From the IMG/VR virus record IMGVR_UViG_3300045970_000794, positions 124,001-188,000 of that record: a stretch of DNA of 64,000 nucleotides, one strand, 5' to 3'. The notes beneath the pieces were generated by a model. The model searched no databases and had not been told where the DNA came from. It was given only the letters and a program-made list of their open reading frames with translations. Made by a program: the position numbers and the translations under genes. This document shows positions 12,602 through 63,894 of this stretch, one piece after another; positions within the stretch are counted from its first letter, which is position 1; the number at the start of each line of letters is the position of its first letter.

Positions 12602-12677
12602 GATTTTTATTTATTAATAAATATCATATATTTTCGAAAAGTTAATAACGCATAACCCACCATTTGAAAATTAAATA

Positions 12678-36356: not shown

Positions 36357-36390
36357 ATAAATTAATATTTAATAATAAATATTCAGTAAT

Positions 36391-39846: not shown

Positions 39847-39972
39847 AATTTTTGTTTTTTTAAATATTAAAATATTATATTATACTAATAAATATACTAT
39901 AATTAAAAAATTTAAATAAATATGTAAATTTTATGTGTGAAAGGTATATTTCAATATATTTATTTACATAAA

Positions 39973-40019: not shown

Positions 40020-41651
40020 ATGGAAAAATTCAAATTAAATGATTTTATTCTAAAAGCTAAAACCATTCATGGTGATAAATATGATTACTCTATCACAAAA
40101 TATCGTAATATAACATCAAAAGTTAAAATAATATGTCCGATACATGGTGAGGTTGAATTAGTTGCTAGAGAACATCTTTATAATAAAATTGGATGTCCAA
40201 AATGTTATAGTAAATTCAATGATATTGAATTAGTAATAAATGAAGCTAATTTGATTCATGGTGATAAATATGATTATTCATTAGTTAATTATATTAATAA
40301 AAAAACTAAAGTTAAAATAATTTGCCCAATACATGGTGAATTTGAACAATTATTACATTCACATGTGAACAATAAACAAGGTTGTCCAAAATGTAGTGGT
40401 AATAAACGATTAACAACTAATGATTTTATTGAAAAAGCTAAAACTATTCATGGTACTAAATACGATTATTCATTAGTTGAATATGTTAATAATTTAACTA
40501 AAGTTAAAATTATATGTCCAATCCATGGTGAATTCGAACAATCACCATCAAATCATTTAATTGGTAGGGGTTGCAAAATATGTGGTAATATTAAATTATC
40601 AGAATTTAGAACTAAAACTAGTGATGAATTTATATCTGAGGCTAATAAAATTCATAATAATAAGTACATATATAATTTAACTGAATATATTGATTGTAAA
40701 AATAAAGTTAAAATAATATGCCCAGTACATGGCGAATTTGAACAAACACCAGATGCCCATATAAATGGTAAACAAGGTTGTCCGAAATGTTCAACAACCA
40801 ATAGCCAACCTGAAGAAGAAATTAATGATTTTATATTTTCATTGGGTATTGAAACTGTTAGACATGATAAAAAAATCCTTAATGGTAAAGAGTTAGATAT
40901 CCTAATACCATCACATAATATAGCTATCGAATTTGATGGACTATATTGGCATTCTGAATTATATGTATCATCTGATTATCATTTATCAAAAACAAATTTA
41001 TGTATAAAAAATGGTATTCAATTAATTCATATATTCGAGGATGAATGGATGTATAGAAAAGAAATAGTTAAAAGTAGATTAAAAAATATATTGGGGTTAA
41101 CCGAAAATAAGGTGTTTGCTAGGAAATGTGAGGTTAAAGAGATTCCACCCAAAATTGCAAAATCATTTCTTAACAATAATCATATTCAAGGATATACTAA
41201 TTCTAATATTAAATTAGGATTATACCACAATAATAATTTAGTTTCTGTTATGTTATTTAATAAACCAAGAAAAGGTATTGGAAATACGGTTGATGGTTAT
41301 GAATTAAGTAGGTTTGCTAGTAAATTAGATATTAATGTGCTTGGTGGTGCATCTAAATTATTTAAATACTTCATCAGTAATTATTCAGCTAATAATGTAA
41401 TAAGTTATGCTGATAGAAGATGGTCTAATGGTAATTTATATGATAAATTAGGTTTTACTTTAAAATCTATTAATAGACCAACGTATTGGTATATATTTAA
41501 TAATAAACGTAAACATAGATTATTATTTAGAAAACAATTATTAATTAAAGATGGTTATGATAAGAACTTAACTGAGCATAGTATAATGCTCAATCGTAAA
41601 ATTTTTAGAATATATGATTGTGGTACTAAAACATATATTCTAAAATTGTAA
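40020..41651 (+). mobile_element. Homing endonuclease with four DUF723-like zinc-ribbon repeats and a Hef-like PD-(D/E)xK C-terminus
   Basis: Four copies of HGxKYxY...KVKIICPxHGE...GCPxC, then ELDILIPSHNIAIEFDGLYWHS and IYDCG. Opposite orientation to the structural operon. Confidence 0.78.
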
Positions 41652-53640: not shown

Positions 53641-53710
53641 ATTAATAGCTATTTTGTGGCCCTATATAGGGTTTATTAGATTTGAAGATTATATAACCTA
53701 CTTAAAATAA

Positions 53711-53738
53711 ATATCCCCAAACTTGCATTTGAGGATAT
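53711..53738. terminator. Hairpin between fibre genes
   Basis: ATATCCCCAAA-CTTGCA-TTTGAGGATAT, overlapping an ATATTTAT motif on the minus strand. Confidence 0.45.
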
Positions 53739-53784: not shown

Positions 53785-55386
53785 CTAAAATGACCCACCA
53801 TCGAGCACATCCCATTCAGCAATTACTCTTACACCATTAGGTGTTGTAACATCACTACTTCGAATCACAATATCATTTAATTGAGTTACAAAGCCTCTGT
53901 TAGCGTACCCATTTAGTGCTGTATATTCACTAATATCTGGAACATTACTTGCAGTAAGTCCAGTTAATGTCTGCATTGTTCTAATATCAAGATTAACTGA
54001 CGAACCAGACGTTCCACTACCATCTTGAATGGTCCAACCAGCACCAATTGACGCTGAGGTAGTACTACCAGTAGGATTATAATTAATATAAACATTATTA
54101 TCTTCAATATATAATTCAGATGTAAATGCTGAAATTGCTTGACCAAATAATGTTAAATTACCATAAACTAATAAATCACCAGAACCAATTGTTTGACCAA
54201 CTGTTAATCCAGATACTACTGTTAAACCACCTGTTATAATATCACCAGTAACATTAACATAGCGACTATCTAAATCAATTAGTGTATGATGTACACTAGT
54301 ATCAGCAGTATGTGCAGTAAAATTAATATTATCAGTCTTAGAATCTAATGATGTTTGTAAATTAATTACAGCACTAATAGGATGAGTATGAGCACTATCA
54401 CCAATAATACTTAAAGTAATACTAGATAATGGATAATGAATAGTTGTATCACCAGTATGACTAACAAAATCAATTATTGTAACAGCAGATATTTGAGTAG
54501 TAGTTACATAATGAGGATTATTTGTATCACCAGTATGATTCGCAAAATCAGTTTGGTATGTCAACGCACTTAAACTAACACTATAAGCACTTAAACTATC
54601 ATTTCTATCAAAATAAATTGTTTTATTATCAAAAGTACTAGCTGTTGTGAATGTATTTGTATCACTACCAGTTAAAGCAAATATATTAAGTAAATTAGTA
54701 CCACCTGACAATATTGTATCACCACTTATTGTTATTGCACTAATTGATGGTGTAATTAAACCACCACTCATTGTACCACCTGTTATATTTACATATAAAC
54801 CATCTAATTCAGTAATTGTATGATGAACACTAGTGTCGGCAGTATGAGTAGTTAAATCAGATTGATAAGCTAATGTATTTAAATTAGCTGTATATGCAGA
54901 TAATTGGTCATTCCTATCAAAATAAACCGTTTTATCAATTAATGTTGCACCAGTAGTAAAAGTATCGGCACTTAATAGATTGGCAAATGACGTTAAATCA
55001 ACATCAATATCAACACCATCACTTCTATAATATCTTAAAAGATAGCCAGTATTACTTCCACTAACAACATATTTATCCAATCCATTGATAACGTCAATTA
55101 ATGGTGTACCACCGCTATAATATGTGTCAGCACTAACGGTAAGTGTACTTATTGGCATGGTGAATACCGTAACACCACTCAATAGATGAATTTCACTATC
55201 ACCGCTACATGAGTAAATATGGTTAGTAACTACACCAGTGCATGCGGTAATGCTAATGAAATCAGTTCCATTAGGTTCGATTATAACATTTTCAATAATA
55301 TTTGGTTGTGTAGGACACGTATTTTGTGATTCATACCCACCGTTTGTTATATAAATGTTCTCGTTTATTTCATTGCAATTACCCAT
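53785..55386 (-). CDS. Tail fibre-like protein
   Basis: Thr/Ser/Gly-rich. Repeats DTxTFTTxxTxxxKTxYFDRND and HTxDTxxH. Ends with LDGGSF. Confidence 0.6.
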   Translation of the reverse strand: MGNCNEINENIYITNGGYESQNTCPTQPNIIENVIIEPNGTDFISITACTGVVTNHIYSCSGDSEIHLLSGVTVFTMPISTLTVSADTYYSGGTPLIDVINGLDKYVVSGSNTGYLLRYYRSDGVDIDVDLTSFANLLSADTFTTGATLIDKTVYFDRNDQLSAYTANLNTLAYQSDLTTHTADTSVHHTITELDGLYVNITGGTMSGGLITPSISAITISGDTILSGGTNLLNIFALTGSDTNTFTTASTFDNKTIYFDRNDSLSAYSVSLSALTYQTDFANHTGDTNNPHYVTTTQISAVTIIDFVSHTGDTTIHYPLSSITLSIIGDSAHTHPISAVINLQTSLDSKTDNINFTAHTADTSVHHTLIDLDSRYVNVTGDIITGGLTVVSGLTVGQTIGSGDLLVYGNLTLFGQAISAFTSELYIEDNNVYINYNPTGSTTSASIGAGWTIQDGSGTSGSSVNLDIRTMQTLTGLTASNVPDISEYTALNGYANRGFVTQLNDIVIRSSDVTTPNGVRVIAEWDVLDGGSF

Positions 55387-55387
55387 A

Positions 55388-56434
55388 TTATAATATTATT
55401 CCTGTTAATCTAAATTTTCCTGTTATTTGTTGATTTTTAGTAAAATCAATTCTTAATGTCTGACCAGCATTAATTTCAAAAGGAAATGCTGTTACAACAT
55501 TGTCAATTCTATATATTGGGTTCGTAATTCCTTGTATTGGTACGAATGTATTAAATAATGCATGATAATTATGAATCATTTCAAAATAATTTTGAGCAAA
55601 TGGTTTACAAACAATATTCAAGTTAATTGTAGCTTGAGCTTCACATACAGTTGTTTTAACAATTGGTTTAGTTGGTTCACATAATTCGACCATTACCATT
55701 GTTCTATCAATTGATGGAACTACTTTAAAATCTTCTTCATTAATTATGTAGCCCAAAAGTTTCATTTCAAACATTTGAACATAAAATCTTCTATTTTCAA
55801 AATCATCAATTGGACTTTCATCACCAATACTTTCTAAATGAACTGGCATTGGATGACCATTAGGTGAAATATAAAATTGTCTTGATTGAAAAGTTTCTTG
55901 TATTTTAACGTTAAATTTATTCAATTCACGCATTCTATTGCAAAATAACCTTACTTCATATGTCATATCAACGGATGTTGGCTGTGGCACTCTATAAGTA
56001 TCCACACCAGCTCGTCCACCGTTCCATGTCGGAACTTTCATGTATGCATATGTGTGATGACCTGGTATATTCCATAAACTTTTTTGATTTGTACCCACTT
56101 GAACATCTGGTTTTCTAACTACTGTAATAAAAGGCATTTGCATATCCTTAAATTCATCAGTAAATTTCCAAGTTCTAGCAAATTCAGCCCATCTTTGAAT
56201 GGTTAAGAATATTACTGGGACTTTTTCACCATCAATTACTATTTGTAAATCTTCATTAACGAATTCAATAAATGTTTTATCCAAATCTTCATACATAACA
56301 CCTCTAGGAAGATAAGTACCACCTTTGGCAATATCTTCAGTAACCATTTCTTCCCTTCTTCTTGGTCCGAAATGTTCTGGATATAATTTCAAATCCTTAC
56401 GAAAACCCTTAGAAAATCCTTTTGGTAATCCCAT
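55388..56434 (-). CDS. Tail completion / sheath stabiliser (T4 gp15-like)
   Basis: YEDLDKTFIEF, QRWAEF, MPFITVVR and PTSVDMTYEVRLF. Position next to the neck genes. Confidence 0.6.
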   Translation of the reverse strand: MGLPKGFSKGFRKDLKLYPEHFGPRRREEMVTEDIAKGGTYLPRGVMYEDLDKTFIEFVNEDLQIVIDGEKVPVIFLTIQRWAEFARTWKFTDEFKDMQMPFITVVRKPDVQVGTNQKSLWNIPGHHTYAYMKVPTWNGGRAGVDTYRVPQPTSVDMTYEVRLFCNRMRELNKFNVKIQETFQSRQFYISPNGHPMPVHLESIGDESPIDDFENRRFYVQMFEMKLLGYIINEEDFKVVPSIDRTMVMVELCEPTKPIVKTTVCEAQATINLNIVCKPFAQNYFEMIHNYHALFNTFVPIQGITNPIYRIDNVVTAFPFEINAGQTLRIDFTKNQQITGKFRLTGIIL

Positions 56435-56435
56435 A

Positions 56436-57056
56436 TCACATTATTTTTTTACCTTTAACCATATTATCTTTAGCCCATAATGGTTGTAAATTACTTAATG
56501 CATTTACAACACTAGGTGGTGTATCGGCTGAAAAGCTACAAACTGGTATTTTATGGTCAATATGCCATTCACCATAATTATTCCATGACATACCCTCAAC
56601 AAATAAAGATTCTAAATGCTCTTTTAATTGGTGTGGTGAATATCCTAGTAAATCAATGGTATGACCACTTTTTTTCTGACCTAACCGCCTCAATGATAAA
56701 TATAATAAACCTCTCCATTTATCACCTATTGTTTGTTTTCGACCTTTTTTTCGTTCTTTATCATATTGTTTAAGCTTAGCATCATTTTTAATCCTATATT
56801 CCTTTTGCCATTTAGAAATTATTTCAGCATTTTCAATTGTATATGTTTTTTTCTTAATCGATATTATTTCTTTATTAGATTCACGATATATTTTAACCAC
56901 TGAACAAATTTTGTCTTTATTAATAATATAACGCTGCCCATCAATTTCTTTTTTACATGTTTTACAATATGTTGAATATCCATCTTTAGATGCTGAACAT
57001 TTATTAAAATCTTCAATTGGTTTATCAATACTACACTTATAACATATTTTAACCAT
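56436..57056 (-). mobile_element. HNH homing endonuclease (probable start MVKICY at 57056)
   Basis: N-terminal CYKC...KDGYSTYCKTC zinc ribbon. WHIDHKIP...NLQPLWAKDN HNH core. Confidence 0.8.
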
Positions 57057-57057
57057 T

Positions 57058-57836
57058 TTATAATCCCTCAAATTCTATTTTATATTTCCATAAATATCCA
57101 CCAGCTGTATTACGTTTTCCAGATAATACCGAATTTATATGTTTATGTATTTTTTTAATTTCACAAACCGATTTCCATTCTTTAATTATTTCACCATCTA
57201 ATGATAATTGAAGAACTGATTTTGGCCTTTGTTTTTCGTGTTTATTTTTAACTAAATAAACATCACGCTTTAATAATTCATCAGATTTATAACGCCAAAT
57301 AAACCCACCAGCACTACTTCTTTTTTTATTAACGACTAAATTTATATTTTTAATATTAAAATTAATTTTAACATCATTAACCGATTCCCATTCTTTAATA
57401 AAATTACCATTCAAATCATATTGGATTACTGAGTCAATTATTTTTGATTTTTTAAAATAGTCAATATTTTTTGGTGTTTTACCTTTTTTTGTTTTTGACA
57501 TTTTATTTTTAGTTTAATCACTTAATTTAACACCTAATGACCCACCATCACCACCATTTGTTAAATTTTTTAATTCAAAACCCCATGTTTTGAATTGATT
57601 TATCCAGTATATCTCCCAAAATCCCCATTCCAAATTTGGTACAATATCAATTATTTCAATTATTGGTGTTTCGTTTCGATTTATTAACGATTTAATCCAA
57701 GCATCTCGTTTAGTTAGTTTTTTTTTGTTTTAGCGTCAAAAATATGACGATATAATCTCTGTTTTAAATTATTTGTTTTACCAATATATTTAACACCAAA
57801 ACTATCACTTAAACTATATATAAATACTGTATCCAT
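57058..57836 (-). pseudogene. Inactivated GIY-YIG homing endonuclease with NUMOD3/NUMOD1 domains
   Basis: ATG at 57836 gives MDTVFIYSLSD..KYIGKTNNLKQRLYRH. A 1-nt frameshift occurs in the A9 run (57718-57726). The next frame gives EIYWINQFKTWGFELKNLTNGG, then an in-frame TAA (57514-57516), then the 147-aa NUMOD1-repeat ORF 57058..57501. Confidence 0.8.
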
Positions 57837-57839
57837 ATT

Positions 57840-58364
57840 TTATTCAGCTGAAAATTCTATTTTATCAACAGGAGCGCAGATTACAGTTCTAAATGCACCT
57901 TCAAACCCCATTATTGTATGTTTATTATCAAAATGTTTTATACCATCATTAACAACACTGAAAAATCTAAGTTCAGTTTCGGTTATTGGGTATCCAATGT
58001 AATCACCATAAGATAAATCAACTTCTAATTCAGTTAATTGTTCTTCATAGATTCCAAATGTTAATTGTCCATCTTGAATGTATCTTAAACTACCAGAATC
58101 TTTACCATATACAGCATTTTCTGGTTCCGCTATGATTGGTACTACTTTTAATTCAACAGGTGTTTTAAATCTGATATCTTTTTTACCAGCTTCACCATAT
58201 AATGAATCAGTTTCACTCAAACCCCTATCAACTTGATAAAGTACCACAACAAAATTACCATCACCTTCAATTGCTTCCCTACCTAAAGATACCTCAAGTT
58301 CAAAATCCTCCCTAGAATACCATTTATTTATCCTAGTTATAGGCATTTTTCTACTATTTCCCAT
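57840..58364 (-). CDS. Neck/head completion protein (T4 gp14-like)
   Basis: VVLYQVD...SLYGEA..IRFKTPVEL, YIQDGQLTFGIY and DLSYGDYIGY. Confidence 0.55.
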   Translation of the reverse strand: MGNSRKMPITRINKWYSREDFELEVSLGREAIEGDGNFVVVLYQVDRGLSETDSLYGEAGKKDIRFKTPVELKVVPIIAEPENAVYGKDSGSLRYIQDGQLTFGIYEEQLTELEVDLSYGDYIGYPITETELRFFSVVNDGIKHFDNKHTIMGFEGAFRTVICAPVDKIEFSAE

Positions 58365-59130
58365 GATTTTTAACGTATTTATGTATTATTTTATTTGAGC
58401 AACCATATATCTCCCCAATTTGAACTAAATTTAATCCATTTTGTTTATATTCAGTTATTTGATTAACATCTAAATTATATTTATTAGACTTAGGTTTATA
58501 TATCTCAAAACGCCTAAGATTATTATTTATAACATCCTTTGAACAATTAAAATGTTTTGCTATCTCAGTTATTTTAAAGTTTTTATTTAAAAATAAATCT
58601 CTTAATTCATCCCCATTTATTTTATATTTAAAATTACCATTATTTTCATATTTATGAATTCCAAGTAATTTAACTTTTTCACTTCGTTGTTTTAACACTT
58701 TTTTCGATAATGATTTACCGTGCATCGGGTTGTTTTTACCAATATTAATTTTCTTCATATATTCTTTGGTTTCTTCGCTATGTTTTAAACCTAAACACCC
58801 TTCACCACCTTTGGTTATATTATAACCAATAGATTTTTCAGTTGAATTATATTTTTGAATCCAATATTTTTCTTTATTATCTAATATTTCTTTAGTATTA
58901 CAATGTTCAAGAATTTCCTTAATAAAATTATTTTTACCGTATTTTTTAATAGCTAATTTTATTATTTTACCAGAACCAATATAATTAGGATTATTTTTAG
59001 AATCTTGACCAATATAAATTTTACCATTGATTAGGTTAGTTGTTTTATAAACAACCATATCAAGTTCAAAATCTTCACGAGAATAGAACTTATTAATTCG
59101 AGTAATTGGTATCTTTCTATTTGCTGCCAT
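58354..59130 (-). mobile_element. GIY-YIG homing endonuclease fused in frame to a duplicate of the neck gene's first 24 codons
   Basis: MAANRKIPITRINKFYSREDFELD, then MVVYKTTNLINGKIYIGQ (own ATG at 59058), EKYWI..YN and NUMOD3 HSEETKEYM. Confidence 0.85.
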
Positions 59131-59219
59131 AATTTTTCTTTTTAGATAAATATTTATGTATTCATAAATAAGCCAGTAAGTATTGATTTTTTATTAATAT
59201 TTAGTAAATTTAGTTCACT

Positions 59220-61076
59220 ATGATAAATATAGATGATATAAAAAATCGGTCATCATTGACATTATTAGAAGGTTATAGTGGTAATAACCCATATATTCGT
59301 AAATTGAAATGGGATTATGTACAGCGTAAAACTAAATTAACTGATAATCAAATGAAATATGTAATTGATAATCACGACAAAGAGCCAATTAAAATGGATA
59401 AAGTCGTGAGGATATCACTATTACTAGGTGAAGAGTTACAAAAACAAACAAATGTTTCATTCGTACCAGAGAAAATATTAATTGAATATTTATTGGCTGA
59501 TACTGAAAAAGCTTTCCACATAATTGGTAAATTAAAGAAAAATCAAAAGGAATCCAGAATGTACTGGATACCTAAAACTCAAATATTTGATGACATATAT
59601 TTTGATGAAATTGACATTGAAGTTGATTTTGACAAATATAAAGCTCTTGATTCACTACATAGAGAACCATTCGAACATCAAAAAACGGGTGTTAAATTTC
59701 TATTAAGTCGAAATGGGTGTATTTTAGCTGATGATATGGGTCTTGCCAAAACATGGCAAGCAATTGTTGCGGCTTTGGAGTCTAATTGTATGAAAATATT
59801 AGTAGTTTGTCCATCTTCAGTTAAAATTAATTGGCAACGTGAAATTAACTGTTTTTGTGATGATACTGTAATTGTTAGTGGTAAAAAATGGAAATCATCT
59901 AGATTCACAATTATTAACTATGATATTCTTAAAAATTTCCATACAATTAAAGAACCTAAAAAATCAGAAGAAGAAGTTACTGTTGAGGTTAAGACTCAAT
60001 TAATTAAAGGTGATTTTGATTTAGTTATTATCGATGAAGCCCATTACCTTAAAAACCCAAAAAGTATTAGAGGTAAGATTATGACTGATTTATGTATTAA
60101 ACATAATATTGAAAAAGTGTGGTTATTATCTGGTACTCCAATTACAAATCGACCTATGGATTATTATAACCTTTTAAAGCTAATTAAGAGCCCTATAACA
60201 GACAATTGGGTCTTTTATGCAAAAAGGTATTGCGATGGGAAAAAGTTCTTTAAAACGCTTAAAACTGGTCAAAGAAAGCAAATATGGCTTACAAATGGTT
60301 CTTCTAACTTAGATGAGTTGGCTCAGAAAACTAGAAACATTATGTTAAGGCGTAAAAAGGAAGAAGTATTGGATATGCCAGAAAAGACTAGAATTCCAGT
60401 CTTCCATGAGTTAGATAAAGCTGGATGGGCTGAATATGATAATCTTTGGGATGAATATTTAGAACAAAGGAAACTTGACGGTAAAACAGTTAATCTACAA
60501 CGAGATTTAACTGAAACTATTTTATTGAGACGATTCATTGCTAAACAATCAATACAACATACTATTGATTTAGCTAATAGTGCGATTGAGCAAGAACAAA
60601 AAGTAATTATATTCACAACATTTACTGATGAATTATTGGAATTGCAAGAATATTTTGGAAAAGAATGTGTTGTTCACTACGGTAAAATAAATGACCGACA
60701 AAAGCAATATGCTGTTGATAAATTTCAAACTGACCCTAATATTAAAGTGTTTATTGGTAACGTAATATCGGCTGGTGTTGGTATTACCTTGACAGCTGCT
60801 AATATAGTTATATTTAATTCATATGATTGGACACCTGGTAATAATGACCAATGTGAAGACCGTGCTTATCGTATTGGTCAAAATAATAATGTTACAGTAT
60901 ATTATCATTTATTTATGAGAACCATATCAACAGTGATGTGGAAAATATTATATGAGAAAAGAAACATAATCTCAATCATCATGAGTGAACAGAATTGTCC
61001 AGAAGATATTGCGATTGATATTATATTAAAAGATGAATTAACTAATGGAACAGAAAGTAATTGTATATCTGATTAA
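59220..61076 (+). CDS. SNF2/SWI2-family helicase
   Basis: HQKTGVKF, LADDMGLAKT, VVCPSSVKINW, IIDEAH, LSGTPITNRP, GVGITLT and QCEDRAYRIGQ. Confidence 0.88.
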   Translation: MINIDDIKNRSSLTLLEGYSGNNPYIRKLKWDYVQRKTKLTDNQMKYVIDNHDKEPIKMDKVVRISLLLGEELQKQTNVSFVPEKILIEYLLADTEKAFHIIGKLKKNQKESRMYWIPKTQIFDDIYFDEIDIEVDFDKYKALDSLHREPFEHQKTGVKFLLSRNGCILADDMGLAKTWQAIVAALESNCMKILVVCPSSVKINWQREINCFCDDTVIVSGKKWKSSRFTIINYDILKNFHTIKEPKKSEEEVTVEVKTQLIKGDFDLVIIDEAHYLKNPKSIRGKIMTDLCIKHNIEKVWLLSGTPITNRPMDYYNLLKLIKSPITDNWVFYAKRYCDGKKFFKTLKTGQRKQIWLTNGSSNLDELAQKTRNIMLRRKKEEVLDMPEKTRIPVFHELDKAGWAEYDNLWDEYLEQRKLDGKTVNLQRDLTETILLRRFIAKQSIQHTIDLANSAIEQEQKVIIFTTFTDELLELQEYFGKECVVHYGKINDRQKQYAVDKFQTDPNIKVFIGNVISAGVGITLTAANIVIFNSYDWTPGNNDQCEDRAYRIGQNNNVTVYYHLFMRTISTVMWKILYEKRNIISIIMSEQNCPEDIAIDIILKDELTNGTESNCISD

Positions 61077-61677: not shown

Positions 61678-61737
61678 ATGGCAGCAACACAAGCAGAAAA
61701 AGATAGATTATTCAGTATATCAAATCCAATTTTTTAA
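61678..61737 (+). pseudogene. Orphaned 5' end of the neck gene (MAATQAEKDRLFS...)
   Basis: Matches MAASEIEKTRLF at 62725 at 8 of 12 residues. Similarity ends at the endonuclease stop codon (61712-61714). Confidence 0.65.
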
Positions 61738-62482
61738 CAATATTTTCATTGTATTTTATTTCGACTAGTGTAATATTATTTTTATTACAATATTTTCGTT
61801 TAATTTCATCACTCTCAGTTGTTAACTTAAATGCATTCTCACCAAAAAGTTTGCATGGTCTATAATGTTGTTCGCCTTGATATTCAATACATGTATTATA
61901 TTCTGGAATATAAAAGTCAAATGGTAATAGATTAATTCGCTTGCAATCATCAAATTTATGTTGTGGAATGAAATTAATATTGTGTTTATTCAAATAATCT
62001 CTAATTGTTTTTTCACCATTAGATTCAGAACACATTGGGCATCCACGACCTTTTTTATGGTGATGTGGTATCTGTGTAAAATCACCATGTATTGGACATG
62101 TGATGATTATTTTAGTCGTAGAATTAACATATATAACTTTTGAATAGTTATAAAAACCATTATGTATTTTTGATAATTCATTAATATATGATTCGGTCGT
62201 TATTCTTGGTATTTTTAATTTGTATGCCTTTTCTTTAATGTCTTTAGCATCTCTTCTTAATTTTTCCCCACAATATTTACTACCAAAATTACTATAGTTT
62301 TCTTTTAAAAATAAAATTTCATCAGTACCCCAAACATTTAAAATATTTAATCCTAATTTATTTGCTTTAACACGTATTGCATTTTTATTTCTATCTAAAA
62401 ACGATGTACATCCAGCTACACCGTTAATCGGGTAGTTTTTGATTAATATATCAATTTCTTCATTAGTCCAATATGTGTTCAT
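61712..62482 (-). mobile_element. Homing-endonuclease-like protein: helical repeats, DUF723-like zinc ribbon and PD-(D/E)xK/DUF559-type domain
   Basis: WTNEEIDIL repeats, CPIHGDF...GCPMC and LPFDFYIPEYNTCIEYQGEQHY. Confidence 0.75.
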
Positions 62483-62642: not shown

Positions 62643-62724
62643 AATATATTGTATTACTTTATAATAAATATACGAATATTTAAAAAATTAGTTGCATTCA
62701 GATATTTATTTAAAAAATAAAATT

Positions 62725-63894
62725 ATGGCTGCAAGTGAAATTGAGAAAACACGCTTATTTAGACAAGTTAGACATCAACTAGGTGCTCCAATGCGTAAAA
62801 TTGAGTTACCAGACGAAAATTTAGTAACTTTATTGGAATTATCTATTGAAGATTACGCTGAATATGTACATAATTGGCTAATAGATAGTCAATGGTCATC
62901 ATTTATAGGTCAACCTATTGATACTTTAGATATGGCATTCGCATTAACAACTAGAACATTAGATTTTGAGACACAATTTACTTATGCTTACTCAAAACAA
63001 GTTGGTTTACAAGCTAGAGGTCCATGGGAACTCAAAAAAGATTATGTTGAGATAGAAGCTGGTAGACAAGTTTATGAAATTCCAGCTGGTCGTGAGGTAA
63101 ATCAAGTATTATGGTTAACCCCATCGGTAACTAATCGTGCATTATTTGCTAATTTTGGTGGTTTTGATAACGGTATTGGTGGTGGTTACGCTCAAACTGG
63201 TTTTGGAGTCGGTGGTGGTGGTACTGGTGCTGGTTCTGGTGGTATGGGTGGAAGAGGTGGATATTATATCGCACCAGCATTTGATGTTTTATTGACTGCG
63301 GCCGATATGAATCTTAAACATAGATTATTAAGAAGTGATTTAGTATATAAAATAACCGCTGGGCCTAATGGTACTAAGTTATTACATTTAATTAGCACAC
63401 CAGGTTCTAAAATGACATTCGGTATGGGTGGTCAAGGTGGAAGTATGGCTGGTTCTAGTTCTTTAGGTATTGCTGGATGTCACGTATGGTATCATTATTA
63501 CGATACTAATGGTGATGTTGATGCATGTAGAGCGGCTAATTTAGATATTATTACGATGCCGAATGAAGTACCATTAACTAGATTAGATTTTGATGTGTTA
63601 AATGAACCTACAAAAATATTAATTCGTCAAATATTAACAGCTAGAGCTAAAATAACCTTAGGAAGAACTAGGGGTAAGTTTGGTGGTGTTGTTGGTCCAC
63701 CAGAAGCTGAAAGAACTATGGATTGGGAAAGTTTATTAACTGAAGGTAATGAAGAATATGGTAAAATATTTGAAAGATTAGCTGCTAGGTTAGAGCAAAT
63801 GACTAATACTAAAATGTTAGAGCGAAAAGCTAATGAAGCTGAAAACTTAAATAAAACATTAGCTTATAGACCCTTAGGATTTTACGTTATTTAG
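62725..63894 (+). CDS. Neck/head-tail connector protein (T4 gp13-like); probable start ATG 62725
   Basis: RQVRHQLGAPMRKIEL, Gly-rich insert, KITLGRTRGKFGG and LLTEGNEE. Confidence 0.62.
   Translation: MAASEIEKTRLFRQVRHQLGAPMRKIELPDENLVTLLELSIEDYAEYVHNWLIDSQWSSFIGQPIDTLDMAFALTTRTLDFETQFTYAYSKQVGLQARGPWELKKDYVEIEAGRQVYEIPAGREVNQVLWLTPSVTNRALFANFGGFDNGIGGGYAQTGFGVGGGGTGAGSGGMGGRGGYYIAPAFDVLLTAADMNLKHRLLRSDLVYKITAGPNGTKLLHLISTPGSKMTFGMGGQGGSMAGSSSLGIAGCHVWYHYYDTNGDVDACRAANLDIITMPNEVPLTRLDFDVLNEPTKILIRQILTARAKITLGRTRGKFGGVVGPPEAERTMDWESLLTEGNEEYGKIFERLAARLEQMTNTKMLERKANEAENLNKTLAYRPLGFYVI

What the first reader, a model, noticed from the sequence alone, without database searches (positions are those of the whole stretch)
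57058..57865. The same neck gene has its 3' end replaced by a second, now dead, endonuclease
Seen: the neck gene ends ...VDKIEFSAE* and the following GIY-YIG/NUMOD1 frame ends ...YKIEFEGL*. An exact 14-bp repeat (AAATTCTATTTTAT at 57852-57865 and 57070-57083) brackets the element. The nuclease domain has a 1-nt frameshift in an A9 run and an in-frame TAA, but the 147-aa NUMOD1 DNA-binding part remains open. Inference: the ancestral C-terminus KIEFEGL* was displaced and now ends the nuclease ORF, so both ends of one small essential gene were rewritten by mobile nucleases. The remaining NUMOD1 ORF may be a domesticated DNA binder.
Basis: partly seen in the sequence, partly recalled or inferred. 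Interest (0 to 1): 0.62.

Follow-up and report, generated by a model that had tools for sequence, protein, structure and literature searches.

The report
Dead homing nuclease with displaced gene tail
A selfish nuclease gene, now broken, inserted into the last codons of a jumbo phage's neck-protein gene, gave that gene a substitute three-residue tail and kept the original tail as a fossil at its own end; this is a clear phage example of a process already known from fungal mitochondria.

Summary
The window comes from a 362-kb phage genome. The 174-aa gene at 58364-57840 (minus strand) has a neck/connector-like fold. It is followed by a broken GIY-YIG/NUMOD homing endonuclease gene (57836-57058), then an HNH endonuclease gene.

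In about 75 of 80 related phages the neck gene directly abuts the next virion gene. The same GIY-YIG gene family sits at this exact site in at least 11 other lineages, mostly intact.

Most neck homologues end EF-x-G-[LIMVF]*, and the closest end KTEFEGI*/KTEFDGI*. The EFEGL* that ends the nuclease frame is therefore the displaced resident tail. That codon pattern occurs once in the window. The K and I before it belong to the nuclease, so the 14-mer repeat is 9 nt of microhomology plus 5 nt of duplicated neck sequence.

The working tail SAE* is a minority neck tail type (SA[KRE]). It is enriched next to this nuclease but also occurs without it.

The A9 frameshift and the TAA recur in four assemblies. 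Reads could not be checked.

Nothing supports domestication of the 147-aa ORF. Its close relatives are almost all full-length nucleases, and the dead catalytic half is as conserved as the binding half.

This is a known kind of event, well documented here.

The parts
57840..58364 (-). 174-aa neck/connector-like gene (gp14-like fold), full length, ending DKIEF-SAE*
   Evidence: more than 1000 homologues of 172-176 aa; best fold matches are phage neck/connector proteins, Z 8.9-10.1. Atlas neighbours carry PF11649.
57840..57851 (-). substitute tail SAE plus stop, the SA[KRE] tail type that travels with the nuclease cassette
   Evidence: It matches the SAE* tail of L141 at 11 of 12 nt, but the closest relative with DNA (L083) at only 4 of 12.
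57852..57865 (-). left copy of the exact 14-mer (codons D-K-I-E-F of the neck gene)
57058..57836 (-). dead free-standing GIY-YIG + NUMOD3 + 2x NUMOD1-like homing endonuclease gene
   Evidence: It is 47-64% identical to intact 253-263 aa orthologues at the same site in L018, L029, L086, L087, L189-L191.
57718..57726 (-). A9 run, one base short of the reading frame of intact orthologues
   Evidence: The same ORF boundaries appear in four assemblies.
57514..57516 (-). in-frame TAA between the catalytic domain and the NUMOD3 motif
57058..57501 (-). open 147-aa remainder (NUMOD3 motif plus two NUMOD1-like repeats plus the ghost tail)
57058..57075 (-). ghost of the resident neck tail, EFEGL plus stop
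   Evidence: the only match to the pattern in 64 kb; 15 of 18 nt identical to the tail of L083; agrees with the family consensus.
57070..57083 (-). right copy of the 14-mer: 9 nt native to the nuclease's 3' end plus 5 nt of ghost
   Evidence: the nuclease-native 3' end is shared with L029 and L144.
56436..57056 (-). HNH homing endonuclease gene between the ghost tail and the next virion gene; its ATG lies 2 nt after the ghost's stop
   Evidence: phrog_1035, E 8e-23; a 46% identical homologue occupies the same site in L012/L151.
55388..56434 (-). 348-aa virion gene that directly follows the neck gene in nuclease-free relatives
58354..59130 (-). intact GIY-YIG/NUMOD3 homing endonuclease gene on the 5' side; its first 24 codons (59059-59130) are a ghost of the neck N-terminus
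58294..58307 (-). exact 14-mer at the inner edge of the 5' duplication; its partner is at 59060-59073

Best explanation
A site-specific, free-standing GIY-YIG homing endonuclease gene occupies the boundary between the neck gene and the next virion gene in this family of roughly 360-kb phages.

Its cassette overlaps the last codons of the neck gene. It brings a substitute tail plus stop (SA[KRE]*; here SAE*), and the nuclease frame runs out into what is left of the resident tail.

In this phage the right-hand junction formed at a 9-nt microhomology between the nuclease's own 3' end (codons Y-K-I) and the neck codons D-K-I. This left a 14-nt direct repeat and the resident tail EFEGL* fused in frame to the nuclease. 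An HNH nuclease gene sits where the normal right-hand homology arm (the 348-aa gene) would be. That may be why an illegitimate junction was used.

The nuclease gene then died. It lost one A in an A-run, gained a TAA between its catalytic and DNA-binding halves, and lost its upstream spacer. The open 147-aa frame is most likely a young remnant.

Shown: the synteny, the orthologous nucleases at one site, the similarity of the ghost, the lesions, and the enrichment of the tail type beside the nuclease.

Inferred: the order of events, microhomology-mediated joining, homing and co-conversion as the driving process, and the nuclease's target.
For: - Ancestral order: in 80 related loci the neck stop lies 0-50 nt from the ATG of the 348-aa gene, except where nuclease genes are inserted. 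The window's gap is 1406 nt. The closest relatives P0002-P0004 have no nuclease there.
- One site, many lineages: orthologous nucleases sit at the same site in L018, L029, L049, L086, L087, L088, L189, L190, L191 and the contig of P0124, and a 104-nt remnant sits there in L144/L145.
- Tails of homologues: about 100 of the top 120 end EF-x-G-[LIMVF], and the closest (76-81% identity) end EGI, DGI or ENL.
- Ghost similarity: 15 of 18 nt (22 of 27 with the two preceding codons) match L083. The pattern is unique in the window.
- Nuclease-native end: the end up to Y-K-I is shared with L029, L086, L087 and L144.
- Second example: the nuclease in L088 ends RGV*, 11 of 12 nt identical to neck tails of nuclease-free relatives, while its own neck gene uses different codons.
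- Tail association: SA[KRE] tails occur in 5 of 11 nuclease-bearing loci against 15 of 177 overall.
- Lesions: present in the 362-kb record, in a second IMG/VR record identical over 5575 nt, and in two Logan contigs with the same ORF boundaries.
Against: - The ghost is only 18 nt.
- Direction is not fixed. The EFEGL* piece could instead have arrived as the left flank of the HNH cassette. No relative with the arrangement neck-EFEGL*-HNH was found.
- Six nuclease-bearing loci keep xG/xS-type neck tails, and four SA[KRE] necks have no nuclease, so the link is a tendency. The counts are not phylogenetically independent.
- The neck tree is poorly resolved, and single-residue controls are also homoplastic.
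- No reads, no expression data and no biochemistry are available.
Confidence: 0.78

Rival explanations
1. The structure is the same but the direction is reversed. The resident gene already ended SAE* with the GIY-YIG gene behind it. The EFEGL* piece then came in as the upstream flank of the HNH cassette from a donor whose neck gene ended EFEGL*, joining at the same microhomology.
For: - The HNH ATG lies 2 nt after the ghost's stop, as if ghost and HNH were one unit.
- An HNH homologue sits directly behind an intact neck gene in L012/L151.
Against: - The body of the neck gene, up to and including D-K-x-E-F, groups with relatives that end EGI/DGI.
- The SA[KRE] tail is enriched beside the GIY-YIG gene elsewhere.
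- No donor-like arrangement was found.
Confidence: 0.12
2. The resemblance is chance. IEFEGL* is simply the nuclease's own tail and the AT-rich 14-mer is coincidental.
For: - About 2 exact 14-mer pairs within 1 kb are expected per 64 kb.
- Nine of the 14 bases are nuclease-native.
- 8.5% of homologues do end in SA[KRE].
Against: - The E-F-x-G-(xTx)-stop pattern occurs once in 128 kb of strand and lands in frame at the nuclease's end.
- No orthologue has this tail.
- 15 of 18 nt match a close relative's neck tail.
- L088 shows a parallel ghost, and the 5' side shows the mirror arrangement.
Confidence: 0.04
3. The 147-aa NUMOD ORF is kept as a stand-alone DNA binder, for example a repressor or a shield of the homing site. 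Alternatively, the nuclease is still made through slippage on the A9 run.
For: - The ORF is open and starts at a conserved Met 12 nt after the TAA.
- A second copy (L049) is also one base short in the same A-run.
- From my own knowledge: I-TevI doubles as a repressor. This is also noted in PMC10448857.
Against: - Twelve of thirteen close relatives are full-length nucleases, and the one 141-aa form is on a 980-nt contig.
- The catalytic half is as conserved as the binding half, which points to recent death rather than selective retention.
- Slippage cannot bypass the TAA.
- The conserved upstream spacer is lost.
Confidence: 0.08
4. The lesions are assembly or sequencing errors and the nuclease is intact.
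For: - Homopolymer runs are error-prone.
Against: - Sequence is identical over 5575 nt in a second record.
- The 40-aa and 147-aa ORF boundaries are the same in two Logan assemblies from other runs.
- The TAA is a substitution, not a homopolymer error.
- ORFs of 1400-1855 aa elsewhere in the window are intact.
Confidence: 0.05

Closest known systems
Mobile endonuclease ORFs (mORFs) of fungal mitochondria that carry a foreign gene C-terminus (Allomyces macrogynus atp6; Glomus atp6, atp9, cox2, nad3), as described in PMC3630166
   Same: The order is host gene core, inserted C-terminal, endonuclease ORF, displaced native C-terminal. The native piece is closer to the nearest relatives than the inserted one. 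The endonuclease frame can be in phase with the gene pieces.
   Different: The host is a phage virion gene, not a mitochondrial respiratory gene. Only 3 codons were exchanged and the ghost is 6 codons. The junction shows a 9-nt microhomology. The nuclease is dead and is followed by a second nuclease gene.
'HEG islands' that bracket essential phage genes, and frameshift-split homing endonuclease genes, in ICP1 and other phages (PMC10448857)
   Same: Several homing endonuclease genes of different classes flank one essential gene. One inactivated nuclease is split into a nuclease part and a DNA-binding part. One orthologue has lost a DNA-binding repeat (L088).
   Different: In the passages I read, that study does not describe exchanged gene termini with ghosts at both ends of the bracketed gene.
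T4-type free-standing GIY-YIG endonucleases (Seg proteins, I-TevI) and intronless homing with co-conversion of flanking markers (from my own knowledge; weak DNA similarity of the upstream nuclease gene to segD/SegB-like genes)
   Same: N-terminal GIY-YIG domain with C-terminal NUMOD-type DNA-binding modules. Presence/absence polymorphism at one intergenic site between conserved genes. A linked polymorphism in the neighbouring gene.
   Different: No activity, target site or homing has been shown here. Sequence identity to T4 enzymes is low.

Membership tests
GIY-YIG homing endonuclease (free-standing, Seg/I-TevI-like) | GIY-YIG catalytic domain | tested here: met
   Pfam PF01541 scores E 3.8e-6, 27.6 bits (cut-off 22.6) on the 40-aa fragment. 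Orthologues score 23.8-33.5 bits. The conserved motif residues are kept in the X-bridged reading.
GIY-YIG homing endonuclease (free-standing, Seg/I-TevI-like) | C-terminal NUMOD-type DNA-binding modules | tested here: inconclusive
   In the window ORF, NUMOD1 scores 16.5 bits (cut-off 22.8) and I-HmuI_NUMOD-like 19 bits (cut-off 27), both below threshold. Orthologues reach threshold: NUMOD1 24.4 bits in L087 and NUMOD3 23.1 bits in L029.
GIY-YIG homing endonuclease (free-standing, Seg/I-TevI-like) | uninterrupted reading frame | tested here: not met
   There is a frameshift at the A9 run and a TAA at 57514-57516. The window's copy is a pseudogene of the family.
GIY-YIG homing endonuclease (free-standing, Seg/I-TevI-like) | same insertion site in diverged genomes, with presence/absence polymorphism | tested here: met
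   At least 11 other lineages carry it between the neck gene and the 348-aa gene, and about 75 of 80 relatives lack it.
GIY-YIG homing endonuclease (free-standing, Seg/I-TevI-like) | site-specific cleavage and homing | not testable with these tools
   This needs a cleavage assay or mixed infections.
mORF-type hybrid gene (inserted C-terminal + endonuclease + native C-terminal) | host gene stays full length with a substitute tail | tested here: met
   The protein is 174 aa against 172-176 aa in homologues, and the SAE* tail belongs to a recurrent type.
mORF-type hybrid gene (inserted C-terminal + endonuclease + native C-terminal) | displaced native tail lies downstream of the endonuclease and is closer to the nearest relatives than the tail in use | tested here: met
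   Over the last 12 nt, the ghost matches L083 at 9 of 12 and the tail in use at 4 of 12. Over 18 nt the ghost matches at 15.
mORF-type hybrid gene (inserted C-terminal + endonuclease + native C-terminal) | substitute tail travels with the endonuclease | tested here: inconclusive
   The tail type is enriched (5 of 11 against 15 of 177, p about 0.001), but the counts are not independent and there are exceptions both ways.
T4 gp14-like neck protein | fold of phage neck / head-tail joining proteins | tested here: inconclusive
   The top fold matches are all neck/connector chains, including T4 gp13/gp14 (Z 8.9-10.1), but the model is weak (pLDDT 60). Atlas neighbour clusters carry PF11649 or PF24214 in 11-19% of members.
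T4 gp14-like neck protein | direct Pfam or PHROG match | tested here: not met
   No family matched at E 0.01 in Pfam or 0.001 in PHROGs. No PDB sequence match was found.

The most novel reading that the evidence does not exclude
The open 147-aa NUMOD frame is retained as a stand-alone, sequence-specific DNA binder. It would sit on the boundary between the neck gene and the next virion gene, and either shield the boundary from related incoming nucleases or repress local transcription. A dead selfish gene would then have become a site-immunity factor.
Probability: 0.08. Interest if true: 0.6.

Novelty: new member of a known kind. Interest (0 to 1): 0.36.

Why it matters
This case shows, with population-level support, how homing endonuclease genes rewrite the very ends of an essential phage structural gene without breaking it. 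The cassette brings a working substitute end and leaves the old end as a fossil. The fossil also marks the recombination junction.

The locus offers a testable system. There are two natural tail types and intact orthologous nucleases. One can therefore ask whether the substitute tail is a cleavage-resistant allele. That would explain why a three-residue polymorphism is scattered across the family tree.

For annotation, the 40-aa, 39-aa and 147-aa ORFs should be merged into one pseudogene.

Tried and rejected
I did not try to get the same information through another tool. The only check on the lesions is their recurrence in four assemblies.
- INPHARED phages: there was no protein match for the neck gene. 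DNA matches were limited to nuclease genes.
- PDB sequence search for the neck family found nothing meaningful.
- Searching for the ancestral arrangement (neck-EFEGL*-HNH) through HNH relatives gave no close HNH homologue. The best was 46% identical, and only L012/L151 lies at this site.
- The tree test of tail type gave 13 changes for 15 tips. Single-residue control states are also homoplastic (median ratio 0.53; 7.5% at or above 0.87), so it is only suggestive.
- Programmed frameshift at the A-run: rejected as the main reading. Most orthologues seen are in frame there, and the TAA would still truncate the product.
- The first call to the search for related loci failed and was repeated.

Full report
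**Context.** The window is bases 124001-188000 of a 362,102-bp virus record with direct terminal repeats, so it comes from a jumbo phage. The region of interest reads on the minus strand. In order it contains:
- a 258-aa GIY-YIG/NUMOD3 endonuclease gene (59130-58354);
- a 174-aa gene (58364-57840);
- three short frames that together make a GIY-YIG/NUMOD gene (57836-57058);
- a 206-aa HNH endonuclease gene (57056-56436);
- a 348-aa gene (56434-55388), followed by further virion genes. A tail sheath gene lies at 45853-43028.

**Is it a neck gene?** Pfam, PHROGs and a PDB sequence search give nothing for the 174-aa protein. It has more than 1000 homologues of 172-176 aa at about 65-80% identity. 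An AlphaFold model built from 43 homologues is weak, with mean pLDDT 60. Even so, its best structural matches are all phage neck or connector chains:
- phiXacJX1 connector, Z 10.1;
- phage Chi neck, Z 9.6;
- T4 gp13/gp14 neck, Z 8.9;
- XkdH, Z 8.2.

Atlas neighbour clusters carry the T4 neck-protein family or a head-tail joining family in a minority of members. In relatives a gp13-like gene lies just beyond the divergent SNF2 gene. The label 'neck' is therefore reasonable but rests on fold and context.

**The observation.**
- the two tails, DKIEFSAE* and YKIEFEGL*;
- the exact 14-mer at 57070-57083 and 57852-57865, which does not extend further;
- the A9 run at 57718-57726;
- the TAA at 57514-57516;
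- the open 147-aa frame.

A third lesion was not noted. Orthologues have a conserved 14-17 nt spacer between the neck stop and the nuclease ATG. Here it is 3 nt.

**Ancestral arrangement.** In 80 related viral contigs the neck gene is preceded by a divergent SNF2 helicase gene. Its stop lies 0-50 nt from the ATG of the 348-aa gene's orthologue. The exceptions are the loci with nuclease genes inserted there. The three closest relatives (78-81% identity) have 2-3 nt between the two genes. The window's 1406-nt gap is therefore an insertion of two nuclease genes.

**The nuclease is a site-specific resident of this boundary.** Orthologues (47-64% identity) lie between the neck gene and the 348-aa gene in these loci:
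- intact at 253-263 aa: L018, L029, L086, L087, L189, L190, L191 and the contig of P0124;
- L088, 187 aa, with one DNA-binding repeat lost;
- L049, which has a frameshift;
- L144/L145, a 104-nt remnant that keeps the first 69 nt and the last 13 nt of the gene.

The intact copies have a GIY-YIG domain, a NUMOD3 motif and two NUMOD1-like repeats.

**The ghost tail.** Of the 120 best neck homologues, about 100 end EF-x-G-[LIMVF]. The closest end KTEFEGI, KTEFDGI or KTEFENL. The 18 nt that close the nuclease frame encode EFEGL*. They match the tail of L083, the closest relative with DNA, at 15 of 18 positions, or 22 of 27 with the two preceding codons. The pattern E-F-x-G-(xTx)-stop occurs once in the whole window on both strands, at exactly this place, with 0.18 expected.

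Orthologous nucleases end WKYKII*, WKYKEM*, WKYKGM*, WGYKM* or run on into the next gene. None has this tail. The end up to Y-K-I is shared with L029, L086, L087 and the L144 remnant. The neck-derived piece is therefore EFEGL*, not KIEFEGL*. The 14-mer is 9 nt of pre-existing similarity between the nuclease's 3' end and the neck codons D-K-I-E, plus 5 duplicated bases. I read this as a junction made at a microhomology.

L088 gives a parallel case. Its nuclease ends RGV*, written 11 of 12 nt like the neck tails of nuclease-free relatives. Its own neck gene ends RGV* in different codons.

**The tail in use.** Up to and including D-K-I-E-F, the window's gene resembles its closest relatives (14 of 15 nt to L083). 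The last 12 nt then switch. They match L083 at 4 of 12 but the SAE* tail of L141 at 11 of 12.

SA[KRE] tails make up 15 of 177 distinct homologues and are scattered on the tree, with 13 changes for 15 tips. Single-residue controls are also homoplastic, so that count is only suggestive.

These tails are enriched beside the nuclease. The window, L144/L145, L189, L190 and L191 have them, which is 5 of 11 nuclease-bearing loci (binomial p about 0.001). Among the eight loci found through the nuclease, the count is 3 of 8 (p 0.025). The counts are not phylogenetically independent, and there are exceptions both ways. Six nuclease-bearing loci keep xG/xS-type tails. Four SA[KRE] necks have no nuclease. 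The L144/L145 remnant shows how the nuclease can be lost while the tail stays.

**The lesions.** The record IMGVR_UViG_3300045971_000325 is identical to window 54668-60242 at all 5575 positions. Two Logan contigs from other runs have the same 40-aa and 147-aa ORF boundaries. Runs of nine or more A/T occur only three times in the window, and the other two lie outside the listed ORFs or at their edge.

I read the gene through with X at the two breaks. The catalytic half is then 60-64% identical to intact orthologues and keeps the conserved motifs. The binding half is 47-59% identical. The death is therefore recent, and the binding half is not preferentially preserved.

L049 is also one base short in the same A-run. 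Most orthologues seen are in frame there. I read this as a mutational hot spot.

**Domestication.** The 147-aa frame's close relatives are twelve full-length nucleases of 251-256 aa and one 141-aa protein on a 980-nt contig. There is no recurrent stand-alone family. I give domestication about 8%.

**The 5' side.** The upstream GIY-YIG gene begins with 24 codons that copy the neck N-terminus (53 of 72 nt identical), then continues with the start that its orthologues use (MV[IV]YKTTN). The duplication ends in another exact 14-mer (58294-58307 and 59060-59073). Orthologues at the same site carry ghosts of 24 codons (L052), 13 codons (L086), 12 codons (L073) or none. The ghost has the NKFYSRED form of the closest relatives. 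The gene in use has NKWYSRED. Both ends of the gene were therefore exchanged.

**Comparison with what is known.** The architecture matches the mobile endonuclease ORFs of fungal mitochondria, which carry a foreign C-terminus and leave the native one downstream (PMC3630166). The setting matches the 'HEG islands' that bracket essential phage genes. That study also reports frameshift-split nucleases and recombination between DNA-binding repeats (PMC10448857). I file this as a new member of a known kind. It is a well-resolved phage example with a junction that can be read base by base and a testable idea about the substitute tail.

Noticed in passing
window 58354-59130 and 58294-58307 / 59060-59073; L052, L073, L086: The upstream GIY-YIG gene is fused to a 24-codon ghost of the neck N-terminus and is bracketed by its own exact 14-mer. 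Orthologues at the same site carry ghosts of 24, 13, 12 or 0 codons, which suggests repeated junction events or stepwise deletion.
   Followed up: partly
L144:2889-2994 and L145:3522-3627: There is a 104-nt remnant of the GIY-YIG gene between a neck gene ending SAR* and the next gene. It keeps the spacer, the first 23 codons and the last 13 nt. It looks like a snapshot of nuclease loss that leaves the substitute tail behind.
   Followed up: partly
L049:4522-5086 (same contig as L089): This independent copy of the nuclease is also one base short in the same A-run (A6 where A7 would be in frame). The run is either a mutational hot spot or a slippage site.
   Followed up: partly
L088:2486-3049: This orthologue has lost one of the two NUMOD1-like repeats in frame (187 aa) and ends RGV*, a ghost-like copy of the neck tail.
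   Followed up: partly
L007, L011, L012, L013, L034, L039, L047, L057, L071 (SNF2 gene upstream of the neck gene); L141:1-2914: In many relatives the SNF2 helicase match is split after residue 177 by roughly 1.1 kb. In L141 the 972-aa product carries an intein-splicing Pfam hit. An intein or another mobile element seems to recur at one site in the neighbouring gene. The window's own SNF2 gene (59220-61076) is uninterrupted.
   Followed up: no
window, 20 sites, e.g. 12616-12624, 36374-36382, 39887-39895, 53706-53714 (-): The 9-mer ATATTTATT is about twice as frequent as expected (20 against 10.2). Several copies lie 15-70 nt upstream of gene starts. It is also the conserved spacer before the intact nuclease genes and is missing before the dead one. 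It may be a promoter element.
   Followed up: partly
window 40020-41651 (+), 61712-62482 (-); G000:C1:73053-73409: The genome holds further homing endonuclease genes: a 543-aa and a 256-aa HNH-type gene in the window, and an intact 262-aa paralogue elsewhere that is 47% identical in the GIY-YIG domain. The genome is rich in such genes.
   Followed up: no
window 62692-63894 (+): This 400-aa ORF has a weak head-tail adaptor match (phrog_211, E 1.8e-5). In relatives the corresponding gene carries a T4 gp13 Pfam hit. The two neck genes therefore flank the SNF2 gene.
   Followed up: no
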